This document shows, piece by piece, positions 22,991 to 38,406 of a DNA stretch of 64,000 bases. Below the pieces are notes generated by a model, which saw nothing but the letters and a program-made list of their open reading frames with translations, did no database searches and was not told the DNA's origin. Position 1 is the first letter of the stretch. Each line of letters begins with the position of its first letter. The stretch covers positions 62,496,001 through 62,560,000 of the forward strand of contig NC_087246.1 of the NCBI RefSeq assembly GCF_037042905.1, read 5' to 3'. Made by a program: the position numbers and the translations under genes. This DNA comes from Lytechinus pictus. Lineage: Eukaryota.

Positions 22991-24926
22991 CAGGTGATAA
23001 TCATGTCCGTTAAATCGGGTATATGAAAATACATGTTATGCCCAGAAAAAAAATCATAAGTAATGAGAGTATGTTCGTCGCGGATCGTCGATCAGCCCGC
23101 AGATTTGCCCCTAACAAAATGCAAGCTTTTCTTTCCAAATTAGTTATACTCATTTTCGTTTTGAATTTTAGTTAATCTCTCGAGGGTTACATATTATGAA
23201 AATCAGATTTTCACATCATACCCCATGGAAAGTGTTATGCTAAGCAAAAAAAATCAAATTGGTGCGATTATGATCGTGGCTATAGATAAGGGCACATTTG
23301 CCCCGTACATGGATTTGCAGGTTTTCTGTCCGAAACAGTTGTATTCATTTTCGCTTAATTTCCTCTTATGGACAATGAAATGCAAAAAGGTTCACATAAT
23401 ACCCCCTATCGAAATCGAAGGTTGGCGTTGTTGTAGCTAACCCCCCCCCCCCCCCCTTACATCCGTTTCTAGGCGCCCTGCATGCATGGCTTTGACCCTA
23501 TTCATCCCCACTCTATTCCCCAAAAGCTATTTTCAGCGTAATCGTGAATGGAGTGTAGAAACTGATTGGGTGCAATCCTTTCTCGTCGTATATAATCCGA
23601 GCTAAAGCTGATCCAAACAATAATTGTTCGCGCAATCAGAATACTTTGAACAGCTCTCGCAGCTCTCCCATTGACTGATGACTCTTTCTGCTCTCCAACC
23701 CAATGATTTTACACCGAAGGATTGGCCGATTGGTCTCGCGGTACGAGCGCAAACACTGAATGTATCAAACACTAACACTGTGCGAAGTTAGTCTTGATTT
23801 ACAAACCTTTTCATTTCTGGATGATACCAATTACCTCCATGTATATTTTCATGATTCTGACAAAAAAAAAATTGAAGGTTTACACATCATCCATTTGCCC
23901 AATCGATAAACTGGTCTTTCGAAGCTCGTCTTGAGATTTTTTCCCCTAATTTTTTTCTCTCTCTCTCTTCGAGCAGCTATGGGCTTCCGGATGGGCCTAC
24001 AATTGCCAGGGGAAAATGCATCAGTGCAATAAGACAATTGCTTGTCAAATGACACAATCCACGGTATATTTTATCTTAAATAATTGAATTCAATGTGAAT
24101 AAGATATTGTTTGATTGTAATTGCACTGTAGGGCCTACATTCATTTTCCTATATTAATTTTTCAAAATTCAAATACTGGGCCTAAAGCTGACTCCCTGCA
24201 TAATATAAGCATAGGCACAGGCGTATCTACATGTATAATTATAGGGGTAAGGGGCCCTAGGCAAGTGCCCACTTTGGTCATAACAAAAAATGGAAAGGAA
24301 CGGGAAGTACAAAAAGAAAAAAAAGAACAGAAAAACATCTTGCAATGGTTTCTTTCATGGCCGTTCGCATAATTTTTTCGCTGGGGGGAGGGTGCAGCAC
24401 GCGTTTACTTTTTCGAATTTTTTTTACAGCAACCGAGCTTGTCATTAGGGCGCTCTTGCATTTTGTAGAATGAAATTGAAGAATTTCATGCATACCTTGG
24501 ATGAATTTTGTGAAAATTTTCAGTAAGATTTTTTTTCTTCAAAATTCAGTCGGGGGGGGGGGGGGGGGGGCTAAGTCCGGCCAACTGCCCCCCCCCCCCC
24601 GCTGCGTATGGCTGTATATGGTTTCTTTTCCACAGATCTAATCATCCAATTACCCCCTATTACCAAAACTCGGTCTATATAAACCACTGAACATCTAAGT
24701 AGCTAAAAGTTGAAAGATTAGAGCTACCCATCGTTTCATGTTTTGGCCCAGTTTTTTTAATTGGTGCAATATTGAAAACCCTCAGGCACCGATTTTGCTG
24801 GATATGATCATACTGAGAGTATGCACTTATAAACGGTTTGATTTGTACGCCTAATCCATCCGCCTCGACATAGAACACCAAAGAAAACCTTTGCGCGGCG
24901 AGCTCCATTCATAGCAGGTGCAACGA

Positions 24927-25296
24927 GTATCCATGGAGATAGCACTACGGGGAGCGCCCTCGCCGTAACGACAACACAAGCTTCGCCAGTTTGCCATTAG
25001 CAATCAACGAGGTCACGGAGGCCTGACGTGTGGAATTTTTCTCAGCGACAAAGAACTCAGAAATCAACCGAAAATGTTCAAAAATACGTTTCAAAGTGGA
25101 TTCCTGTCGATTCTATACAGCATCGGCAGCAAACCCCTTCAGATCTGGGATAAGAAGGTGAGTTTTGGGGTATTTTTGACGATTTTATTATAATGGGGAA
25201 TCCGGCATGCGCGCCTTTCTTGTCAACGAGTACACCCCTCCATATTGGTTGTGGTAGTGGTATGCATGCACGGAGAAAGGGGTGTTGCTTAGCAGC
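24927..25296 (+). promoter_or_regulatory. CFAP20-A promoter and intron-1 RFX X-box-like motifs
   Basis: GTATCCATGGAGAT (24927-24940) and GTTGCTTAGCAGC (25284-25296) in a CpG-rich patch around exon 1. Confidence 0.5.
25074..25157 (+). CDS. CFAP20: CFAP20 copy A, coding exon 1 ([28 protein letters not shown])
   Basis: Manual translation matches the conserved CFAP20/BUG22 N-terminus; donor GTGAG. Confidence 0.96.
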
Positions 25297-26182
25297 AGCA
25301 ATGGAGGAGCGATCATGTGCCAAACAGTAACCCGCTGGTCCCGGTGCCTCTGATTTATGTTGTATCCTCTTAGGAATGGTTGTGATTTCTACTGTTTTGT
25401 TGATATGATTAAAAAAGGAATCATATATATGTTTCTTAAACCTGATTCAATTAAATCAATTTCTTTCAATTGTATATCCAAATACAACATACATGTACAT
25501 GTTAATTTGGGAAGCCAGAATCCAATTTCACTTTTCATGTTTTTTATGAATCGTGATTCTGAAGAAATGTGGATGTGTGAAACCAATAAACCCTCTTCAC
25601 TTTTGATAATCCAAAGTAAATTGCAGAAATTAGAAATCTGTTGAAAATACTTTAGTTCATTTTCAGAACCTAACTCTGATTCAGCCTGAAAGGAAAATTC
25701 AAAGTTATGAGTTTATTATTCCATTGTCAGATAAATTATTTCTAAACTCTAAATTTAAAGTTATTTTGTCAATCATGAATGTTTTTTTTTAATTCTGGTT
25801 GCTATGATTGATTATTATTTGTTATTTAGGATTTTTTTTATTATTATAAGTTGTGCTTGATAGAATTCTTGGTTTCTTTGTTGTGATATAGCCTATACAT
25901 AGTAGTTTATATCCTTCTTCCCCTTGATTGTGACAAACAGCTTTTATGATAATTATACCTTAATATTGATAAGTAGTATATAAATAGTATATTAACCATT
26001 GAAACTTTTTTTTTATTTTAGTGACGGTACATATGAAATTCTACTAGAGTCAAGAATTGTACAATGTATTATGTTTTGTTTCTGTTATATATTCCACTTA
26101 AGCCTTAATGAAAGATAAGGAATATCAATATATATAATTTTACTGATTTTGATGAATTTTCATTTTTTTTCCCCCTTAACAG

Positions 26183-26497
26183 GTCAGAAATGGACACATA
26201 AAAAGAATAACTGATAACGACATCCAGTCATTAGTTCTTGAAATAGTCGGCACAAATGTTAGTACCACATTCATCACATGTCCTTCAGAACCAAAAAAGA
26301 CCCTTGGTATCAAGCTCCCATTTTTAGTCATGATCATCAAGAATCTCAAGAAGTACTTCACGTTTGAGGTCCAGGTTCTCGACGATAAGAACGTCAGGAG
26401 ACGTTTCAGGGCGAGCAACTACCAGAGTACGACGCGTGTCAAGCCTTTCATCTGCACAATGCCCATGAGACTAGATGACGGCTGGAATCAAATTCAG
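26183..26497 (+). CDS. CFAP20: CFAP20 copy A, coding exon 2 (VRNGHIK...GWNQIQ)
   Basis: Canonical AG/GT boundaries, 105 codons of CFAP20 sequence. Confidence 0.96.
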
Positions 26498-27185
26498 GTA
26501 GTTATTTTGTTTTATTGAAATAATTTGAAAGTATTGATTATTATTTATAAGTTTATGTCACTTATTTACATGCCAAGTTTGTCTCTTTTAGTATTATTAC
26601 ATCTTTGCCGACCCTATTATGAGGCCTAATCATCTCTATAAAATGTATATTTTTACCCTCAAACAAGTTCATACCCTACAATTTTTGGTAATACGGGTGA
26701 AATCCATTTCAGTATAGAGCGATTCACATTTTGTCAATTCCCTTTCGAACAAAAAAAATCTGAGAAATGTATCTGAGTATGAAATTATATTGATAGCACA
26801 TGTATTGAAATTTATCAGTAGGCATAATTACTTTTGCCCCTTTTATTGGGTTGAAAGTGATATTGTATACAAAATTAGACTTAGTAATATATTTTTTTTC
26901 AATTAAATGGATGATTATTCAATAGTGATATGCTACTCAACATTGTAAATGCTAGGAAGCTCTATCAGCGGAACAAATATGAAAGTGGGGGGGGGGGGAC
27001 TGACCATGCAAACAATCGCAATCAGATGGTAATTTTTACTTTTTTGTACACAGTTTAAAAAAAGTGGTGGCTGAAACCCACCCAGTGCCCCCCCCCCCCC
27101 CCCCGGTTCTGTGGGCCCTAATTCAGATGTTATCTCACTACCATTTTCTATTAACGATTCCTGTTTTTCTCCCTTTAACACACAG

Positions 27186-27251
27186 TTTAATCTATCAGAT
27201 TTCACAAGGAGAGCATATGGAACAAACTATATTGAGACATTGCGAGTTCAG
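27186..27251 (+). CDS. CFAP20: CFAP20 copy A, coding exon 3 ([22 protein letters not shown])
   Basis: Canonical splice sites, in frame. Confidence 0.95.
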
Positions 27252-28205
27252 GTATGTTTCATCTCTTTTTCCAATCTCCAAATATGATTCATTTAGTTTT
27301 GTTATTCCCACATTTAAGTGAAAACACCAAGAAATTTTATTAAAATTAGATATCAAATCATTGAAGCATTAATGCAATGATGAACATTAATATATATATT
27401 TCCATCTGCTGTGTTGATGTGTATGATTTCCTTGTATTCTGAGCTTTAAAGGGAATTCTGGAGCATGATTCAATTTGAAAAGGTGCAAAAAAAGTCCAGC
27501 AATGAAGCCCAGTGATATTTCATTTTTAAGCTGTGTTTTATAACATTATCCAGGCATGCAACATACTTTTGGTGGCAGGAGTGGGATGTGATATAGATTG
27601 AATGACAACTAAAGGCCATGGATGTGTTATTTATTTACTAATAGTTGATATGAGCATCTTGTGAGGATCAAAACCAATGCAGTGTTGCTTCAATGTCTTT
27701 GAACCTAGTGCCATGCTGAATAAGACTGTAATCTAGATAAATGAAGGCACTTGCAGTACATGTCAATTTCATAAGAAAGACTGTAAAACCAAGGGTAATT
27801 ATCAGTGTTATCACAGATCTAAATCTGGTACAGCTACATTAACTGAACAATAACACTCTCCATCAATAAAAGATTGAAAAAAAGGATAAAGAAATCAGGA
27901 AATCTAAGCTGAAAAATAATCACACTGAATATCACCAACACAGATAAGCACATGTTGTGGAACAGAGTATTATATTGCTTGGGAAAAGACCTAACATTGT
28001 GCTCGAAATTCATGCTTGTTTTTCATATTTCTCAGCAATTACACAATTTCTTCCAGAATCCTTTGGCACATACACCTTAGTGGTCATTTGATTGGATTCT
28101 GTACCATAGGCATTAAAAATATATTTCATTTACAAGTCATTGAGTTTTTTTAGTTTTCAACTTAGTATTTCCATTGTTTTTTAAATTTTATTCACCCTTG
28201 TACAG

Positions 28206-28328
28206 ATCCATGCTAACTGCCGAATCCGACGAGTATACTTCTCCGACAGACTGTATTCAGAAGACGAACTACCTGCAGAATTCAAACTTTACTTGCCTGT
28301 TCAGAAGGGTACCAACCAAAGGAGTTAA
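28206..28328 (+). CDS. CFAP20: CFAP20 copy A, coding exon 4 (IHANCRIRR...[11 protein letters not shown]); 195 aa in total
   Basis: Acceptor tacag, conserved C-terminus, TAA at 28326-28328. Confidence 0.95.
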
Positions 28329-30509
28329 ACCCCCCAATGGGTATGGACATTCAAAGTGAAAGCAAAGACACTTTAGAACTCATTGTCAGCAATAGGGAAG
28401 AACCGATCCACATTGTTGACAAAAACCTCATTCAACTTTTCAGCCCTCATGCAGAGAAGTCGAACGTCTATGGTACGACTACTGTCGTGATCTGCGTATC
28501 GTTTTGATAAAGCAGGGTCGTTGATCCCTTCTTCAATTTGCGCCAAGAGAGGTGTAACAAAGTTTAAAGTGTATCTCTCTTTAACATGTGTTAGTGAGGC
28601 AAGTCTTAACTCAAAATGATATTTATGATTGTGAAATCCTGTCTAGTTTGTCAGGAAATTAGGTGAGCTTACCTTAGCAATAACTGCCAAGGAAATTGAA
28701 AAGATTTGCGATTGTCTAATGTGAACGAATATGTTCATAACTAGGCTGATGGACTGAAACTCGAGAAAATATGTTGAAATCAAAGCAGGCCTTTGCTATT
28801 TCCATTGCTCTCCCTTTTTCAGATGTTATGGAAATGGTTCCTTATTTAGATCTTGGATTCATGCTAAATGATCTTAATGAAAAGCATGCAATTGTAACAC
28901 TGAGCTTTCTCTTCATTTTAGGACTGCTTTTACCCCCAGTTTGTTATACATTCAAGACTTTATATGCATGTACCAGTACTTGAATTGAAAGCTGTAGAGA
29001 AAGGGCAACCATGATCGAGTGACATCTGATTTGAAATTCTTTCAAAGACTATCTACAAGAAATGAACAAAGAATGTTGGTCACTTACAAAATGCCTAATT
29101 GAAAGTCACCTTATGCTTTATTTCATTGTTAATGTAGCTGTTATAACATAAGTACTGTATGGTATATTGTATTTTTGTCTGTGTTTGTCTGTGCAGTCTG
29201 GCACTTGAGTCAAAGTTCATTAAATTACTATTCACTCCTTTGCATGCTTAGTACAGGTATTCACAGTTTGTGCTAATTGTTGCTACATTTTTAGTTGAAC
29301 AAAAAGTTGGTCACTATTAAACATCACATCATAATTTGGTCATAGATTGTATAGTGAGTTTAAATATGTATGTCAATAATGTCACCAAAGCTGACTAAAA
29401 ATGGGCTGCATGTCTTCATGAATTCTCAAAGCCATTATGAATCGATCAAGATAAGGAATTGTCCTTTGGATACAAGATTATATTGCTCTGCAATGATTTT
29501 TGGAAAATTAGTTAGTTTTTCAATACAACTCTAGGGTTATGCTAACTGATGATTCAAAGTTTCAAACGGTCCATTACAAATGCTCTACTTTTTTTCTTCA
29601 TTTTGATGTATGAAAATCTTTGGTGGTTAGAGGGAAACTGGGAATCAATCATCTCTTTTTTTCCTAAATAGGTAATATATTTAGCGTAATACATTAATTT
29701 ATTTAATTATAAAAAGTAATATGATTGAATTTGTTACTTTTAATACACTCTTTGCCTAAATATCAAATGAAGGACAATGCAAGTCTAGTAGACTAGAAAA
29801 GTTATCTGACATTTGTACTGTAATCTAGGGTAAGCTTATTGTGTATATAAATATCTCAAAATGACATTAATATGCCTGTAAATATATATATGTTATGTAA
29901 CTAAAGATTATGTCATGTAACCATGTTACAATACTCAGAAATATTTATGTTCTCTTCAGGCTTTTTCATATCAGACCATGATTTGACATGTGCTGATTCT
30001 AATAATCCAAATAGTTATTTTCTGAATTTAAATGTAAAAGAAGTTAGATCATGTTTACATATTAACTTTGTATTATGAACAGTGTTTTTAATGAGATGGT
30101 GCCATGTGATGTCTTTTTAAATTACATATCTTTATTCTATTATTTGGTTTTATCAACCTTATTTGCCTTAGGTTTTGAAGATTTTGTATTCAAAATGCAC
30201 CATCAAAAGCACTGTGCATAAGATAATAATATATGTTGTACTCTTACTATTATTTAAGTAATTGCTCTGCTCTTATGGAGTGCAGGATAACTTATTTTAA
30301 ATCACTGAGAATTGTCAATTATGTTCATGTAATCTGTGTACAATCAGATTCTACTTTGTCTTTTTTATATAGTTCAAGACAAAAATACACTTTATAAACA
30401 TGAAAGTTCTTGGCCTGTTATAGAAGTGAATTACTTTGTGCTTTGGTGAAATTTGTTTGAATTTTTGATAGTGTGGATGGTCCATAAATATCAGAATGAT
30501 TAAGGAAAT

Positions 30510-30702
30510 ATGGTGGTGATAAAGTTGATGATAATGGTGTGATGATGGTGGTGGTGATGGTAGTGATGATAATGACTGTGATGATATGGATGGTGTGTTG
30601 ATGATGATGATTGTGGTGGTGGTGATGATAGTGCTGATGAAAATGATGATATTGATTATTCTGGTTGTGAATGGGGTTGTGATGATTATGATGGTAATAA
30701 TA
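30510..30702. repeat. Degenerate (GAT/GGT)n microsatellite
   Basis: Triplet run. Confidence 0.85.
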
Positions 30703-30730
30703 AATTTCATTTGATATATATCTGTATGTC

Positions 30731-30773
30731 AGTCATGATCAAGAATCTCAAGTACTTCATGTTTTAGGTCTAG
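30731..30773 (+). pseudogene. Short relic fragment of CFAP20 exon sequence
   Basis: agtcatgatc---aagaatctcaag---tacttcatgttttaggtctag aligns to agtcatgatcatcaagaatctcaagaagtacttcacgtttgaggtccag of copy A exon 2. Confidence 0.65.
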
Positions 30774-33662
30774 CGGGATGTATAAGCTATTTAAATCCCT
30801 GCTTCTGACTGGTTGAGAGTAAATTTCACTGACAAGATGCTTCATTATCTCACAAATGAATTTGGTCTGATACCATTTTGCACAATAACCATTTGGTCCA
30901 TCAGTCAATTTGTCCGTGTAGTGGTCTAACTGCAATTGGTCTTATTTAAGTTTCTCTAAACTAACCTATTACCTCTCATAACCAAATGATCCAATTACTC
31001 TTGGTTTATTTATCATTTGGTATGGATGACAACGCGTTTTAAATATTTTACTATTTGCATTAAAAAAATGTTTTTCATTCTTTTCTTCTGAGTGGAGGGG
31101 TACAGTAAGGCAAAAACCATAGACATTGTTTTTTTTTGGGGGGTAAACAATATAGTGGCAAAATGTACCAACTTTATTATCCCACACCCATTCATGAAAT
31201 ACTGGATTTGCTACTGTCGCCCATATCAATTCTTTAATTTTATCTCTTACTTTACCTTCAATTACATATCTTTAAGTTTCTCTTTAACTAGTTTATGTTT
31301 CACACACACACACACACTCTCTAACACTTCTTTCCTATATTGCTCATCAAGTTTCATGCATTGTTCTTCCCGTTCCCTCAACTTTTATTTCAATTTTTCT
31401 TATTTCCTCATTCTTTTATTCCCTTTCCTTCCCCTTATTACTCTCGCATTCCACATATCATATTCCCCCACCCATTCACATCTATTTCATTCACTCTTTC
31501 CTCTTCAATCTCCCTAATTTCCAATTCAATTCTTCTGTTTTTCTCTTTCTTCTCTCTTTCTCTATCAATCACATTCCCTTCCAATGCTTTCACTGATTTA
31601 TGTTTCACAGTTCACACTCTCTCTTTTCAAGTTGTATTTCCTTTATTTTTCATCTAATTTTCCCATCTTTTGAATTTACTCTCAGCATAAGAACCTAATT
31701 CTTTAATCAATGCCTTTTAAAATAAATGCCACTGGATTGACAAGGCCTTGCATCTCTCTCTCTCTCTCTTTTTTTTTTGGGGGGGGGGTATCACTTTTTT
31801 AATAACAGACAACATCTCATGATTTCTTGTATTGTGCCATGTTAAAGAGGGACTTTCCAATTAGATAGTATTTATATATCTGACTTGTTTTCTCAACTTC
31901 CCAAACTCCTGAGGGTTCAATTTAAATCAGGTCTAAAGCTGTGTTATCAATATGGGAAGCCAATCACACAAATTCTTCAAAGTGCAGGTTCAACTTATCA
32001 GCTAATATGACACACAAATTATTCATAAATGTCTGGAGATCAATATCTTAAAATAGTTTTGTACCCCAATGATGCAAGAGAAAAGAAAACCGTAAAATGT
32101 TGGAAACGTAAAATGTTAACAAAATTTTGACATTTTGGTTTCCCATAATTTTCTAACAGAGCTAAACCATGGCACATTAAGTTGAACTGGACTTCAGAAT
32201 AAGGGCCACGGCTTTTTGAAATACAATGTTCAGTTGCCTGGGCAGTAATAAATGGAATACAAGAAGGAGACCATGTATTAAGTGAATTTTAAATAAATAT
32301 ATTTGAACATGAATTGTAACAATGCATAACAAGAGAAACATGCAACTTTAAGTCAATATAAGCATGGACTCATAACATGCTATTCCGTACTTAAAATTTG
32401 AATGAAAGAAATATTTACACCCTATTAATATAAGTATATACAAGTGAGGTATCTACCTCAACATTAAATTTCAGTTAAAACAACCACCAAAATAAAAAGA
32501 AAATAAATTGAAAATGAAAAAAAAATCTTAAATCCATTACATTTGACATACAAGTTGTGTCTCACACACAAATATATATGAATCAGTGTTCATTACTAAG
32601 AATAAATGCCTAACCCACAATTTGGCAATGCAGCATAAATAAATACACCACAAACAGTTTCAACATTTTCTTGAACATATAACTGTATCAAAGTAAACAC
32701 AAGTCCTTTGGTAATATGAGGTCAATACATTTGCTTGTCAATCAAAAAATTAATTAAGATAAAAATTTTCCAAAACAATTCTTATACTAGGGTCTGTAAA
32801 ATACTGTAACTTGATTCCAATGCCATGTGCAATATTGTTTTCCTTGGTGATTTTCTAACAAGGTTTCAAAACAAGTAAACATGTGCTCAATTAACATTTC
32901 CACTAACTTATGGTCATTACACACCTTGCAATTCGTCTATGCCCCAATAGTAAAAGAACATGTATTGCATATTTTGTAATGATATTGTAAATAGCTTTTT
33001 ATTTATTTAAGGTTCAGAATAACTATTTGAACACAAATGTCAATTTGTTATTGAAAGTTCAGAGCAATCGCCAAATTGGCTTAAGTCGTAGTCAATTGTA
33101 CAATTGCTATGATGTCATTACTACTTTAGAGTGAATTTGCTTTTATATTTATGAGGAATGAAATAACAATTTAATGCTACCTAATGATATCTAGAAATTT
33201 GGACAGTAGTATAGAACATGTTTTAATTTTCACATCAAATGTTAGAACACTTTTCTCTCCAAATCGAGTCATAAACCAGTTGTAAGGTATCCATTGGTTA
33301 TTACATGAATCCAAGTGCATACATCTGTTTGCTGAAGCATATTCTCCTTAGCACATAATTATAAATTCTAGACACTGAATTCATTTACTTCTTTCTCTAT
33401 TTGCCTAGGACCCTGATATCTAAAACCTTACTGAGTCAAATTGCACCAAAACATTTTTCAAACAATTCAACATTTCCCATTCATAGTAATATCAAGAAGA
33501 TAATTTCATAAAACAATTTTCTCCTCTAAAGTGAGAAGAAGGCGCACCATGAGTTTGCGTGAAGCACAAAATGTCTTCCAGCGACATTGTAATGTTCTTG
33601 TACATTGTCCAAAACAAATTTGATTTGGTATTGCAAGTCTTTTGTATGTTCAAGGTTCTCCG

Positions 33663-33785
33663 CTAATTCTTGGTTGCCATACCCTTTTGAATGGGCAAAT
33701 AGAGTTTGAATTCAGCAGGCAATTCGTCTTCTGAGTACAGTCTATCAGAGAAGTATACTCTTCGGATACGACAGTTGGCATGGAT
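33663..33785 (-). CDS. CFAP20: CFAP20 copy B, coding exon 5 (IHANCRIRR...[11 protein letters not shown]); 195 aa in total
   Basis: Reverse-strand translation; acceptor cccag; stop TAG. Confidence 0.95.
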
Positions 33786-34267
33786 CTGGGGAGAAAAAAC
33801 AAAATGTGCCAGACAATTAGTTAACTAGATATCTTACTGAAAAGATAAGAATGTAATTCAAATAGCCTGCACACATTAACTAGAAGTATAATTATTAGAG
33901 AACCTTTAAGAGACACTTTTGCATTAACCTCCAATCCTGAATAAGTTGTTAAAGTTAAGCTAATCAATACAATATCTAATTCAATAATATAATTAAAAAT
34001 ATTAAAATAATACTTATTAATGGAAACTGAAAATGCTTGAATAATTATAGTTATCATTCGTGTAGGCTAATGGTACATCCAGACTTTTTCCTTCAAATTA
34101 TGAGAATTTCAAAGAATAACAATTGTTTTCAATTCGAAGGGTGAAATCTTACTTGAGAAAAATGGAAAGTTCTGTACGTGAATCAAGTAAGAAGATTTTA
34201 CTAAACAAAGGTGTTGATTTTTAAATCATAAATCTAGTATTTTGTAAAAATAAATGATATTACTTAC

Positions 34268-34333
34268 ATTTACTCTAATGGTCTCAATGTAGTTCGTTCC
34301 ATATGCTCTCCTTGTGAAATCTGACAAGTTGAA
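34268..34333 (-). CDS. CFAP20: CFAP20 copy B, coding exon 4 ([22 protein letters not shown])
   Basis: Canonical AG and GTAAG boundaries, 66 nt. Confidence 0.95.
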
Positions 34334-34539
34334 CTGTTTGATATAAACAAAATGAAAAAATATGGATTATAAAGTGCTGAAAGTAGACCCTACATGTATG
34401 TCGATATGCTTTGTTGTTCAGAAATAAAATATTCATGTTGAAGATCTGCAACCAATGTCTCCATCAATGTTATACAAAATAATAGTAAAATTTTATAGTG
34501 CTGAATACTATGTTGGCATGCATGCACACAATTCATTTA

Positions 34540-34722
34540 CTTTCTCCACTCCCTGGGGAGCATTCCAATAAGAGTTCCAAAACTCATTTATCAACTTGGT
34601 GGAGAGTGGCAAAATGTGGATTGACGCCTTGTCAAAGAGCACTACATGTAGGCTGCGATGGGATTCAATCAAACACACACGACCCTCTGATTACAAGGTG
34701 AGAGTCTGAACCACTACACAAT
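34540..34722 (-). mobile_element. Partial, degraded tRNA-derived SINE, family 2
   Basis: Matches the 44354-44711 copy (tggagagtggcaaa..tgtggattgacg; cacacgaccctctgattacaagg). Confidence 0.75.
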
Positions 34723-35410
34723 GATAATGATCAAAAGACAACCTAGTCATGATTTCCATGTAACTACCACAGTAGCAAAGTTGCCTTCAATGTGCAAGGC
34801 CCTTCTTTTGCCCCAACCCCCCCCCCCCCCCACAAAAGAATTGGAGTATGTACATGCATGAACGGTTTCAGAAGGAATTCTACGAAGAGAAAAAAACGTA
34901 ATTCAGCAAAGAATATGTAATCAAAGACAATTCTGTTCATTTGTCAATTTCAAAGATACTGCACAAGTCTAAAAACATTAAAACACATCAAGAAAGTACA
35001 TAACACAAAGAAATTAACAGTCATTGAAATTTTAAATTATTTCAAAACATTGTTAAATATGTGAGGATAATTACTTCACTTCAGAACAAGGAGGTTTCAT
35101 TTTAATACATCTTTGTTATGAATGAGCCTAAGGCTTCGCTGCCCATTCCCCCAAGCAAAAAGTGCCAATCACATACATTTATTTCATTCCAGAAATCAAA
35201 GAAACTCCAATGAAAGTTATGTTGTTGGAAACTTATTTACTGAAAAAGAAAATCAACTTTTGTTAATTATCTTTTAGGGGATAGCATCCCCCAAGCCCAA
35301 ACCAGTGCACCAGTGTAAAAAAAAGAAGACCAACACCCTCTTATTCAGAAAACAAATCCCTCTAAAACCAAAGTTCTTCCATGAAATACAAATTGAGAGT
35401 AAATAACTAC

Positions 35411-35645
35411 CTGAATTTGATTCCAGCCGTCATCTAGTCTCATGGGCATTGTGCAGATGAAAGGCTTGACACGCGTCGTACTTTGGTAGTTGCTCGCCCT
35501 GAAACGTCTCCTGACGTTCTTGTCGTCTAGCACCTGAACCTCAAACGTGAAGTACTTCTTGAGATTCTTGATGATCATGACTAAAAATGGGAGCTTGATA
35601 CCAAGGGTCTTTTTTGCATCAGATGGACATTCAATCAAAGTTGTG
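35411..35645 (-). CDS. CFAP20: CFAP20 copy B, coding exon 3 ([16 protein letters not shown]...GWNQIQ)
   Basis: Acceptor cacag, phase 2; donor GTAGTT; 235 nt. Confidence 0.95.
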
Positions 35646-35984
35646 CTGTGGGCAAATGAGAGATTTTTATAATATGGAGTTACCAGGTAAGCATTTTCAA
35701 CCAACAGAGAATTGCACAAAAAACATCTAGGGGTCTCCATTTCTTTAATGCTTTAAATATCTCTCTTACAATGATTTGTACTACCAATTCCTGAATACCA
35801 AGAACATAAAAAATTGTATCAACCACTAGAAAGATAGAACAGTACATTTAAAATGGATGACAATGATGATGATAATGACAACAATCACTCACTTGATAAC
35901 AGTCACAAAAAATTTTAAGATAACATCTTTAATATTTTAGCAACTACGAGAGAATCTTCAACAATAAATTCTTAAAAATAATTG

Positions 35985-36080
35985 TAATGATAATGATGAT
36001 GTCAATAATGATAATGATAATAATAATAATGACAATAATGATAATAATAATCATAATAATAACAATGACAATAATAATAG
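35985..36080. repeat. (AAT/GAT)n microsatellite in the copy-B-specific intron
   Basis: Triplet run. Confidence 0.85.
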
Positions 36081-36303
36081 AAGATTCTAAGTTATAAAGT
36101 GCAAAGAGAGGATACAAAGAAAAAATTTGAACTGTAAAATATAGATTAGAAACATGTGAAGCAAGTTTATTATGAATAGGGTCTTGATCTAAACAAAGAA
36201 ATAACACTGGAAACAATTCCTACAAGTCAAAATTGAAAATAAATATAGATTAATCCTGAATACAATCATTTCAAAATTGAAAATAGAACAAAAAAAAACT
36301 TAC

Positions 36304-36383
36304 CTGACATTTGTTCCTACAATTTCCAGTACAAGTGACTGGATGTCATTGTCTGTGATTCTTTTGATATGGCCATTCCTCAC
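36304..36383 (-). CDS. CFAP20: CFAP20 copy B, coding exon 2 ([27 protein letters not shown])
   Basis: 80-nt exon with AG and GTAAG boundaries. Confidence 0.95.
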
Positions 36384-36637
36384 CTAAAACAAATAAATGA
36401 AAATAAAGTCACACACAAAAAAAATCAAATCTACTCTTAATTTGTGAGAAGCGTAGCTGCGGGGTACTAAAAGACAAGTTTAACTTCCTGATTTCAACTT
36501 CTTATCTTCAATTCTATTTTCATGTGGTTATCATCTTCCTGTTCCTTACTCCACTTAAGGTCCAATTCCGACTCAAGGAATACAAGACTCAGAGAATAGG
36601 AACCAAGTCCTGTTAAAAAAAAATTCTGCATATTGTC

Positions 36638-36726
36638 TACCTCGGGCGATGTTCGTGCAGGCTAGGTGGAGCGTAGTGTAGCGGTAGTGAAGTGGAGTGG
36701 AGCCTGCACGAACATCGCCTGAGGTA
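36638..36726. mobile_element. 89-bp hairpin mini-element with a 9-bp target duplication (CATATTGTC)
   Basis: 26-bp inverted repeat with one mismatch; CATATTGTC at 36629-36637 and 36727-36735. Confidence 0.8.
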
Positions 36727-37012
36727 CATATTGTCTAAATATGTACTAGTGAGTCTATCCACACATTTGTCCAGACACACTGAAAAGCAGTAGATTCTTT
36801 CTCACAAGATAAATCAGCTGCATGTCTTAATCTCTAAAAGTTAAAATCTGTAGTCTGCCCATTTTGGCAAGCTTCTCAAGATAGACCATGGTTCTGACAG
36901 AAGCCACCCCGCTACCCCGGGCGTTGTTATGCACAGAAAATATGGTCTGCAAAATCATTTGCTGCTGAATAAAAACACCTTACAATTTTTAATTTGGAAC
37001 ATCCAAACTCAC

Positions 37013-37096
37013 CTTTTTATCCCATATCTGCAAAGGTTTACTGCCTATGCTGTATAATATGGACAAAAATCCACTCTGGAATGTGTTTTTGAACAT
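37013..37096 (-). CDS. CFAP20: CFAP20 copy B, coding exon 1 ([28 protein letters not shown])
   Basis: Reverse-strand translation identical to the copy A exon 1 peptide; donor GTGAG. Confidence 0.96.
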
Positions 37097-37169
37097 TTTG
37101 GCGAGTTGAAGTAATCAATGAGTTTGAAAATTTAGAGAACGCTCTAACGTAACCGTGCTTCGTGGCGTC

Positions 37170-37293
37170 TTGTTGCTAACTGACAGCACTATTTTGTGTT
37201 TTGCGAGAATACACACATCACACACGTGTGTTTCGCACTAGTGACTTATCACAATAGACCCATGGTCGCTTAGTTACGTAGTGAATGGCAACG
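37170..37293 (-). promoter_or_regulatory. CFAP20-B promoter with RFX X-box-like motifs
   Basis: GTCGCTTAGTTAC (37265-37277) plus GTTGCTA and TGGCAAC half-sites just upstream of the ATG. Confidence 0.5.
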
Positions 37294-38406
37294 CCAAGCG
37301 GCAATCTCGTCATCATCATCAATCGATGAGGTTATTTCGGGGGTATTAAAATTTTCATTCATTGCTCCCCATCCCCGGCGGCCGCGACGGCCGGGCCGGT
37401 GCCCTTCCTCATCAAAACAGGGGCAGCGCCTGTGTATGTGTGTGTGTGTATGTGGGGGGGGGGGGGGGTTGAAGCCAGAGGGGATGCCCCAACAACCCCA
37501 ACAACGTCCCCAAAAGAAAAAAGGGGGGAGGGGGAAAGCGAAGGGAGAGAACAGAGAAGAGGGGGTTGTTGGGGTTTTTTTCTCATTATTTTTTCTCGAA
37601 AGAAGAATTAAAAAAAAAAACCAGACAAAACGTATTTTCGCTTTATACATAAATATATTTTCCTGGTTCCCGATGTCTGCTTGGTAGAATTGATTTTATA
37701 ATATGCCATTCCCGCAGCTTTCCCGTTTGTTTTCCCACTTCCTTTCTATAGGCCCTACCCTATAATATTATGTACCTACCCCGTTTTCCACCCCGGCCAC
37801 GGCAATACAGTGTATTTTTATATACCGATACCTGGAATAAAAGTAGAAGTTTAAGTATACATGAAAATCATTGTCCTCCAAACTGATGACATAGAATTTT
37901 TGGTCGTACGGGTAAACTATTTTCTACCGCCACTTCCAATAGGCTACTTCTTCCGATTCTCAACAAGATTAGGCTTATAAATACAAGACTAGATTCGATG
38001 AAACTTTACTATATCCTGATATACATACATCTCCTGTCTTGTTTTGCGCCCTTAATTTTGTCTTAATCATACAAAAGGATACTTTCTTGGTATTCTTGGT
38101 AGATTAGCCCTCAATTTCTAAGGGAAGGGCTAGATAGTTTCTTGAAGGTAGCTACTGTAGGTGCAGACACACCAAGTGGAAGTTTGTTCCACTGATGGAC
38201 CACTCTGTTGCTGAAGAAATGGCCCGTTAGTTGTGTTCTGGAACGGCTTTGGAACAATTATAATTTTCTGGAATGACCTCTTTAACTTTTTTAGGTTGAG
38301 AGAAGAAACTTTGGGCTGAATTTCCATAGTACCCATTTAAATATTTAAAAGTGTTAAATAAGATCTGCTTTAATTCTCCTCTCCTCCAAAGATTCAGATG
38401 GAATTC

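What the first reader, a model, noticed from the sequence alone, without database searches (positions are those of the whole stretch)
26294..35614. Gene-conversion tract shared by the two CFAP20 copies
Seen: over the 68 codons KKTLG...WNQIQ (A 26294-26497; B 35614-35411) the copies differ at only 5 of 204 nt, and identity runs 10 nt into the intron (GTAGTTATTT in both). Exon 1 differs at 16 of 84 nt, and the codons just upstream of the tract differ even in amino acids. Protein constraint cannot explain synonymous and intronic identity. Inference: localised ectopic gene conversion between inverted copies homogenises the core while the segment with paralogue-specific residues (58-65) escapes.
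Basis: partly seen in the sequence, partly recalled or inferred. Interest (0 to 1): 0.78.

Follow-up and report, generated by a model that had tools for sequence, protein, structure and literature searches.

The report
Old gene-conversion tract in CFAP20 duplicates
Two very old, tail-to-tail copies of the ciliary gene CFAP20 in a sea urchin share one ~216-base stretch that was copied from one gene into the other. This is a real and clean case, but an ordinary example of a well-known process.

Summary
Exact-protein look-up identifies the window as Lytechinus pictus. It holds two intact, expressed CFAP20 genes in convergent orientation: A on +, 25074-28328, and B on -, 37096-33663. They differ at 5 of 204 nt over CDS 196-399, against 83 of 384 nt elsewhere, where synonymous sites are saturated. 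Identity runs 10 nt into the intron.

A local synonymous or RNA-level constraint is excluded:
- Between L. pictus and L. variegatus orthologues the tract changes at least as fast as the flanks.
- The ratio of paralogue to orthologue differences is 12:8 in the tract and 166:8 in the flanks.
- The tract shows no deep nucleotide conservation against bivalves, no Rfam match and no unusual fold.

An assembly artefact is excluded. The independent L. variegatus assembly and RNA reads from other individuals show the same tract and the same two haplotypes.

The best explanation is interlocus gene conversion. However, the tract groups weakly by paralogue (2 sites to 0), so the last full event predates the split of the two species. 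Ongoing homogenisation is not shown. The tract covers most of the longest homologous exon block, and its 5' end abuts the conserved paralogue-specific residues 58-65.

This is a new member of a known kind, of low to moderate interest. The scan had already noted the paralogue pair itself (s1-322077).

The parts
25074..28328 (+). CFAP20 copy A (NCBI 'CFAP20', protein P0198). It has four coding exons: 25074-25157, 26183-26497, 27186-27251 and 28206-28328. The protein is 195 aa.
   Evidence: Spliced ORF rebuilt. Exact protein found in L. pictus. A-type transcripts are seen cross-mapped in RNA reads (joint 34324>35411 carrying 9 A-type letters).
33663..37096 (-). CFAP20 copy B (NCBI 'CFAP20-like', protein P0197). 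It has five coding exons: 37096-37013, 36383-36304, 35645-35411, 34333-34268 and 33785-33663. The protein is 195 aa.
   Evidence: All four introns are confirmed by stranded RNA reads and contigs (joints 33785>34268, 34333>35411, 35645>36304, 36378>37008 +5). The protein is identical in L. variegatus.
26292..26507 (+). Converted tract in copy A: CDS 194-399 plus the first 10 nt of the following intron, about 216 nt.
   Evidence: The last upstream difference is at CDS 193 and the first downstream difference at intron +11. Inverted repeat I1.
35401..35616 (-). Converted tract in copy B: CDS 194-399 plus the first 10 nt of the intron. It starts 29 nt inside B exon 3.
   Evidence: Logan contigs from both species end at these borders (records 5 and 9).
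26371..26386 (+). A 16-nt patch (CDS 273-288) that holds all four read-supported A/B differences inside the tract. Sites 273 and 279 are paralogue-specific in both species. In copy B the patch is 35522-35537.
   Evidence: clustering P = 0.0035; the A-type letters always occur together (cleanest = 3).
26270..26293 (+). Codons 58-65 of A (FITCPSEP), directly upstream of the tract. The B counterpart (LIECPSDA) is at 35615-35638.
   Evidence: Each type is conserved in L. variegatus. The B-type residues 58, 60, 64 and 65 are conserved in the PDB 8snb chain.
35646..36303 (-). Intron 2 of B, phase 2 in codon 55, which copy A lacks. The corresponding point in A is 26262|26263.
   Evidence: The splice is confirmed by RNA. 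A bivalve and a sponge have an intron at the same position and phase, so it is ancestral and was lost precisely in A.

Best explanation
The tract is the footprint of interlocus (ectopic) gene conversion between two ancient CFAP20 paralogues that lie tail-to-tail, with the two tracts 8.9 kb apart.

Inferred mechanism: a break in the large exon of one copy was repaired using the inverted paralogue as template, without crossover. About 216 nt were overwritten (CDS 194-399 plus 10 nt of intron).

Why this exon: B exon 3 (235 nt) is the longest uninterrupted homologous block between the copies. The other exons are 66-123 nt, and the introns are unrelated.
- The 3' end of the tract coincides with the end of homology.
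- The 5' end lies 29 nt from B's intron and immediately after the last paralogue-specific residue (codon 65).

Timing: the last event covering the whole tract happened in the common ancestor of L. pictus and L. variegatus, at roughly 1 to 1.7 times the age of their split.

Consequence: the 68 residues encoded by the tract are identical in the two present-day copies (and in the bivalve and bovine proteins), so homogenising them is silent at the protein level today.

Shown here: the young age of the tract relative to its flanks, the absence of local synonymous constraint, its presence in two species and in reads, and expression of both genes.

Inferred only: the repair mechanism, the direction of transfer, and whether there was one event or several.
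For: - Divergence: 5 of 204 nt in the tract against 83 of 384 outside, with saturated synonymous sites outside. Fisher 1.3e-9; permutation 5e-6.
- Rate-independent test: paralogue-to-orthologue differences are 12:8 in the tract and 166:8 in the flanks, Fisher 2.3e-5.
- Orthologue synonymous differences: 6 over about 81 sites in the tract against 6 over about 163 in the flanks, so the tract is not slower. P for a 10-fold constraint is 5e-6.
- Synonymous divergence between the paralogues in the tract is 0.10-0.12. Intron divergence between L. pictus and L. variegatus is about 0.10 pooled.
- The borders are sharp and identical in all four genes.
- The genome holds only two copies.
- The independent L. 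variegatus assembly and RNA/DNA reads reproduce the tract and both haplotypes.
- There is no deep nucleotide conservation: identical degenerate codons between urchin and bivalve are 38-47% in the tract and 43-54% in the flanks.
- No Rfam family matches, and the fold z-score is -0.41.
- GC3 is 0.62-0.68 in the tract and 0.39-0.45 in the flanks. This is compatible with GC-biased conversion.
Against: - The classical signature, in which the tract groups by species, is absent between the only two species I could reach. The 2 informative sites group by paralogue.
- The intron identity of 10 nt is barely longer than the 8 nt shared by an unconverted donor site.
- Counts of orthologue differences are small (12 synonymous in all).
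- Part of the GC3 excess is intrinsic to this protein segment: bivalves show 0.50 in the tract against 0.37-0.40 in the flanks.
- Neither the donor nor the number of events can be determined.
Confidence: 0.85

Rival explanations
1. Recurrent conversion bounded by selection. The tract has been converted many times since the duplication. Events that carried the paralogue-specific residues 58-65 were purged. GC-biased repair raised GC3. This is the reader's model, and it is a refinement of the best explanation rather than an opposite.
For: - The tract begins directly after the last amino-acid difference.
- B-type residues 58, 60, 64 and 65 are conserved in L. variegatus and in the PDB 8snb sea-urchin chain.
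- GC3 is 0.66-0.68 in the tract against 0.40-0.43 in the flanks. In single-copy bivalve genes the gap is only +0.11 to +0.14.
- The remaining differences cluster in a 16-nt patch (P = 0.0035), as expected from patchy or nested events.
Against: - No site groups by species, and sites 273 and 279 have stayed paralogue-specific in both species. There is therefore no sign of any full-tract event since the split.
- In the RNA reads the A-type letters occur only as the complete 4-site haplotype, so no recombinants are seen.
- The GC3 contrast with the bivalve is only marginal.
- The boundary is explained equally well by the nearby end of homology.
Confidence: 0.25
2. Crossover between the inverted copies. 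Reciprocal exchange inside the exon inverted the 8.9-kb interval and swapped the 3' halves of the genes. The tract would then be the heteroduplex footprint at the breakpoint.
For: The inverted orientation, with a 216-nt near-identical block in each gene, is the substrate for such inversions. A single tract located at one point of the gene is what a breakpoint would leave.
Against: The locus is collinear between L. pictus and L. variegatus. Nothing in codon usage distinguishes the 5' and 3' halves. There is no outgroup to show a swapped arrangement, and non-crossover repair is the commoner outcome (general knowledge).
Confidence: 0.08
3. Local constraint on the nucleotide sequence, such as an RNA structure, a splicing element or an embedded non-coding element, keeps both copies alike without any transfer.
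For: The tract groups by paralogue at its 2 informative sites. GC3 is unusual in the tract.
Against: - Orthologue synonymous change in the tract is at least as fast as in the flanks.
- The paralogue-to-orthologue ratio is 12:8 in the tract against 166:8 in the flanks.
- The tract is no better conserved than the flanks between urchin and bivalve.
- No Rfam match, and the fold z-score is -0.41.
Confidence: 0.03
4. Assembly or polishing artefact that made the two exons look alike.
For: The near-identical inverted segments are longer than short-read k-mers, and Logan contigs break at their borders.
Against: - The independent L. variegatus assembly shows the same tract, borders and two fixed paralogue-specific sites.
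- RNA reads from another L. pictus sample show both haplotypes at 273-288, and exon junctions that tie the tract to A-specific and B-specific exons.
Confidence: 0.01

Closest known systems
Mosaic paralogues shaped by interlocus gene conversion, e.g. GOT1p1/GOT1p2 of the copepod Tigriopus californicus (PMC3728101)
   Same: Old duplicates have blocks of very low divergence next to blocks of high divergence. The divergent islands are read as regions where conversion does not occur or is selected against.
   Different: In the copepod, conversion looks ongoing across populations. Here a single short exon-limited tract predates a species split, and the converted part encodes identical protein in both present-day copies.
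Gene conversion between adjacent inverted paralogues in Caenorhabditis (hsp16 modules, hsp70-7/-8; review PMC3966223)
   Same: The paralogues are adjacent and in opposite orientation, a few hundred bases to kilobases apart. Conversion is confined mostly to exons because the introns have lost homology, and the tracts are short.
   Different: Those pairs are mostly homogenised over whole genes. Here all but one part of one exon is saturated at synonymous sites.
Genome-wide interlocus gene conversion in teleost duplicates (PMC10503786) and a model of mosaic divergence in tandem paralogues (bioRxiv 10.1101/2025.10.29.685298)
   Same: The same process and the same consequence: local under-estimation of the age of a duplication.
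   Different: Those are statistical or model-based treatments. This is a single locus with mapped borders.

Membership tests
Interlocus (ectopic) gene conversion tract | A discrete segment whose paralogue divergence is significantly lower than in its flanks, synonymous sites included | tested here: met
   5 of 204 against 83 of 384 nt. Degenerate codons 5 of 64 against 58 of 113, Fisher 1.3e-9. Permutation 5e-6.
Interlocus (ectopic) gene conversion tract | The low divergence is not due to a locally low substitution rate (comparison with orthologues) | tested here: met
   Orthologue synonymous differences: 6 per 81 sites in the tract, 6 per 163 in the flanks. Paralogue-to-orthologue ratio 12:8 against 166:8, Fisher 2.3e-5.
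Interlocus (ectopic) gene conversion tract | Phylogenetic incongruence: the tract groups by species while the flanks group by paralogue | tested here: not met
   With L. pictus and L. variegatus the tract has 2 paralogue-type sites, 0 species-type sites and 8 singletons; the flanks have 78 paralogue-type sites. The event is older than this split. Older outgroups could not be reached, so incongruence at deeper nodes is untested.
Interlocus (ectopic) gene conversion tract | Similarity extends beyond coding sequence into non-coding flank | tested here: inconclusive
   10 nt of intron (GTAGTTATTT) are shared by all four genes, but an unconverted donor pair also shares 8 nt.
Interlocus (ectopic) gene conversion tract | Both loci really exist and carry the tract (not an assembly artefact) | tested here: met
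   Second species assembly. RNA reads and contigs show both haplotypes and copy-specific splice junctions.
Interlocus (ectopic) gene conversion tract | Non-reciprocal transfer with an identifiable donor and recipient | not testable with these tools
   This needs a species with unconverted copies. The flanks of both copies have similar GC3 (0.41 and 0.43), so composition gives no direction.
Synonymous-constraint or structured-RNA element inside a coding exon | Reduced synonymous rate between orthologues and deep nucleotide conservation | tested here: not met
   The tract evolves at least as fast as the flanks between the Lytechinus species. Identical codons between urchin and bivalve: 38-47% in the tract, 43-54% in the flanks.
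Synonymous-constraint or structured-RNA element inside a coding exon | A known RNA family or an unusually stable fold | tested here: not met
   No Rfam match in 24800-37400 apart from a chance-level SNORD96 hit elsewhere. Fold z-score -0.41.
GC-biased gene conversion signature | GC3 is raised in the converted segment relative to the flanks, and relative to unconverted orthologues | tested here: inconclusive
   Urchin: 0.62-0.68 in the tract, 0.39-0.45 in the flanks. Single-copy bivalve genes already show 0.50 against 0.37-0.40, so the excess over the bivalve is marginal.

The most novel reading that the evidence does not exclude
The tract is a long-lived 'conversion island'. On this reading it has been converted repeatedly, with GC bias, since an ancient duplication. 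Its 5' edge is held in place by selection on residues 58-65. These residues distinguish the B-type CFAP20, the type modelled in the sea-urchin sperm doublet microtubule of PDB 8snb, from the canonical A-type. The locus would then be a natural marker of which residues make the two inner-junction proteins functionally different.
Probability: 0.2. Interest if true: 0.4.

Novelty: new member of a known kind. Interest (0 to 1): 0.22.

Why it matters
Mostly as a caution and a small lead.

The caution: the two CFAP20 genes of Lytechinus would be misdated, or mis-grouped in trees, if this exon were used, because it is far younger than the rest of the gene. The example is unusually clean because the borders are mapped to the base, two species are available, and both genes are expressed.

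The lead: CFAP20 is one of the most conserved ciliary proteins, and sea urchins keep two copies whose few differences (residues 58-65, 152, 155 and the tail) are conserved. The B-type is the one in the solved sperm doublet. L. pictus is described in its genome paper's title as a genetically enabled model (reference cited in PMC11310861), so swapping these residues is feasible.

The conversion process itself is textbook biology.

Tried and rejected
- Reaching other echinoid genera failed. Three protein searches returned only 90%-cluster representatives, because CFAP20 is so conserved that urchins, oysters, insects and fish fall into one 803-member cluster. One of these searches was misspent on a 40-aa exon fragment and found only unrelated exon fragments.
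- The exact look-up of the A-type protein found nothing outside the window's own genome.
- The run search gave only two organisms.
- The bivalve L005 and sponge L007 codon maps were out of register and were dropped from the codon comparison. L008 looked vertebrate-like and was not used.
- I considered that the intron loss in A and the tract came from one cDNA-mediated event. I rejected this because CDS 165-193, between the lost intron and the tract, is the most diverged stretch (11 of 29 nt).
- A B-gene polymorphism at CDS 531 that matches A's letter is not a micro-conversion, because the diagnostic site 2 nt away stays B-type (cleanest = 0).
- The paper describing PDB 8snb is not held. I recall its source species as Strongylocentrotus purpuratus, but this is not verified here.
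Full report
**What is there.**
- The window contains no N.
- A self-comparison shows five pairs of matching exon segments in inverted orientation between 25071-28319 (+) and 37099-33670 (-). One pair, 26278-26507 against 35630-35401, is 96% identical; the others are 77-85% (inverted repeat I1).
- I rebuilt both genes. Copy A has four coding exons and copy B has five. Each gives an intact 195-aa CFAP20 (PF05018).
- The genes are convergent, with about 5.3 kb between their stop codons.
- Exact-sequence look-up places both proteins in Lytechinus pictus. The B-type protein (P0197) is also present, unchanged, in L. variegatus.
- DNA and protein searches of the whole 812-Mb assembly find only these two copies, so there is no third donor.

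**The observation.**
- 5 of 204 differences over CDS 196-399.
- 16 of 84 differences in exon 1.
- Amino-acid differences at residues 58, 60, 64 and 65.
- GTAGTTATTT at the start of the following intron in both copies.

Outside the tract, synonymous sites are saturated (pS 0.57 to above 1). The two copies share identical codons at only 49% of degenerate positions. That is no more than the 43-54% each urchin copy shares with bivalve CFAP20. Inside the tract pS is 0.12. The contrast is far beyond chance: Fisher 1.3e-9, and a permutation test on the 60-codon window with fewest differences gives about 5e-6.

**Second species.**
- The look-up of encoding contigs returned the L. variegatus locus (L003, GCA_018143015.1) with both orthologues in the same tail-to-tail arrangement.
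- The tract, its 5' border (between CDS 193 and 194) and its 3' border (intron +10/+11) are the same in all four genes.
- Inside the tract, two sites (CDS 273 and 279) are paralogue-specific in both species, none groups by species, and eight are singletons. The flanks have 78 paralogue-type sites.

**Constraint or transfer?** Under constraint the tract should also evolve slowly between orthologues. It does not.
- There are 6 synonymous orthologue differences over about 81 sites in the tract, and 6 over about 163 in the flanks. The chance of this under a ten-fold slowdown is 5e-6.
- A test that does not depend on the local rate gives paralogue-to-orthologue differences of 12:8 in the tract and 166:8 in the flanks (Fisher 2.3e-5).
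- Against single-copy bivalve genes the tract is no better conserved at degenerate codons than the flanks: 38-47% against 43-54%.
- Rfam finds nothing in the tract, and its predicted fold is ordinary (z = -0.41).
- The tract is therefore young, not slow.
- Its paralogue synonymous divergence (0.10-0.12) is about the same as the pooled intron divergence between the two species (about 0.10, range 0.06-0.19).
- Together with the two shared fixed differences, this places the last full event shortly before the species split, at roughly 1 to 1.7 times its age. The counts behind this estimate are very small.

**Reads (runs).** I laid one stranded RNA run kept as raw reads, two sets of contigs from the same organism, and one set from the second organism on gene B.
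- All four B introns are confirmed, including the one that A lacks. B is therefore transcribed and spliced as modelled.
- A-derived transcripts cross-map onto the tract. They are recognisable by a junction carrying nine A-type letters of A's next exon, so A is expressed too. Depths are comparable in one sample: about 150 for A and 148 for B in X1.
- At CDS 273, 279, 282 and 288, about 20-30% of reads carry the A-type letters, and always all four together. Two clean haplotypes exist and no recombinants are seen.
- The reference B allele at CDS 327 is absent from 30 of 30 reads. The supported A/B differences in L. pictus are therefore four, all within 16 nt (clustering P = 0.0035).
- The contig from the second organism reproduces four of the five letters at which L003's B copy differs from L. 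pictus B (CDS 264, 288, 327, 336), but not the one at CDS 294. It ends exactly at intron +10.
- These data, with the independent assembly, exclude mis-assembly or mis-polishing.

**Why this exon.**
- B's intron in codon 55 (phase 2) sits at exactly the same position in a bivalve and in a sponge. It is therefore ancestral, and A has lost it precisely.
- As a result, the only long uninterrupted homology between the copies is B exon 3 (235 nt, CDS 165-399). The other exons are 66-123 nt, and the introns are unrelated.
- The tract fills this block from 29 nt after its 5' end to its 3' end and 10 nt beyond.
- That is what break repair limited by homology would give (inference from general knowledge of homologous recombination).
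- The 5' end also falls immediately after the last paralogue-specific residue. Those residues are conserved: each type is kept in L. variegatus. The CFAP20 chain of the sea-urchin sperm doublet structure, PDB 8snb, is B-type and differs from the L. pictus B protein at only two residues. A-type is closest to the bovine protein.
- Selection against conversions that reach codons 58-65 is therefore plausible, but it cannot be separated from the mechanical explanation with these data.

**Composition.**
- GC3 is 0.62-0.68 in the tract and 0.39-0.45 in the flanks, in all four genes.
- Bivalves show a smaller excess in the same segment: 0.50 against 0.37-0.40.
- This fits GC-biased conversion, possibly repeated, but it is only suggestive.

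**Comparison with what is known.** Interlocus gene conversion producing mosaic paralogues is well documented. Examples include adjacent inverted pairs in Caenorhabditis (PMC3966223), divergent islands that persist beside converted blocks in Tigriopus GOT1 (PMC3728101), and genome-wide estimates in teleosts (PMC10503786). My two literature searches on this found no report on CFAP20 gene conversion. This is a new instance of a known process.

**Verdict.**
- Gene conversion is supported, with about 0.85 confidence for non-reciprocal or recombinational transfer as the cause.
- Ongoing homogenisation and selective 'escape' are not demonstrated.
- Interest is low to moderate.
- The scan had already noted the paralogue pair on this same DNA (s1-322077).

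Noticed in passing
window 26262|26263 (A) versus 35646-36303 (B): Copy A has precisely lost an intron (phase 2, codon 55) that B keeps. A bivalve (L004) and a sponge (L007) have an intron at the identical position, so this is a clean intron loss in one paralogue.
   Followed up: yes
whole proteins P0197 (B) and P0198 (A): The CFAP20 chain in the sea-urchin sperm doublet-microtubule structure PDB 8snb is B-type: 2 aa from L. pictus B, with the same tail. A-type is nearest to bovine CFAP20 (7rro). The source species of 8snb was not verified here.
   Followed up: partly
window 35483, 37085, 33720, 33753: The reference alleles of B at CDS 327 and CDS 12 are absent or in the minority in RNA reads of another sample (0 of 30 and 2 of 9). 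Two further B-exon SNPs segregate at about 50%. This indicates high polymorphism, or private alleles in the reference.
   Followed up: partly
window 34433-34789 and 36575-36812 (introns of B): Dispersed repeats show depth hundreds to thousands of times that of the gene in every run, including RNA, with many reads running off into unrelated sequence. ARAGORN finds no tRNA there.
   Followed up: partly
L007:1-3335 (sponge Corticium candelabrum): Two CFAP20 genes lie head-to-tail within 3.3 kb. This tandem duplication of the gene is in a different orientation from the urchin pair and in a distant phylum, so it is probably independent.
   Followed up: no
window 26975-27105 (A intron 2) and about 34812-34835 (B intron 3): In A's intron, long G and C homopolymer runs (11 G ... 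17 C) flank a segment of about 100 nt. B's intron has a similar G run. This may be a repeat family or an error-prone sequencing context.
   Followed up: no
window 27371-27447 (+): Sub-threshold SNORD96-like match in an intron of A (24 bits against a gathering score of 43, E = 0.82). Probably chance.
   Followed up: no
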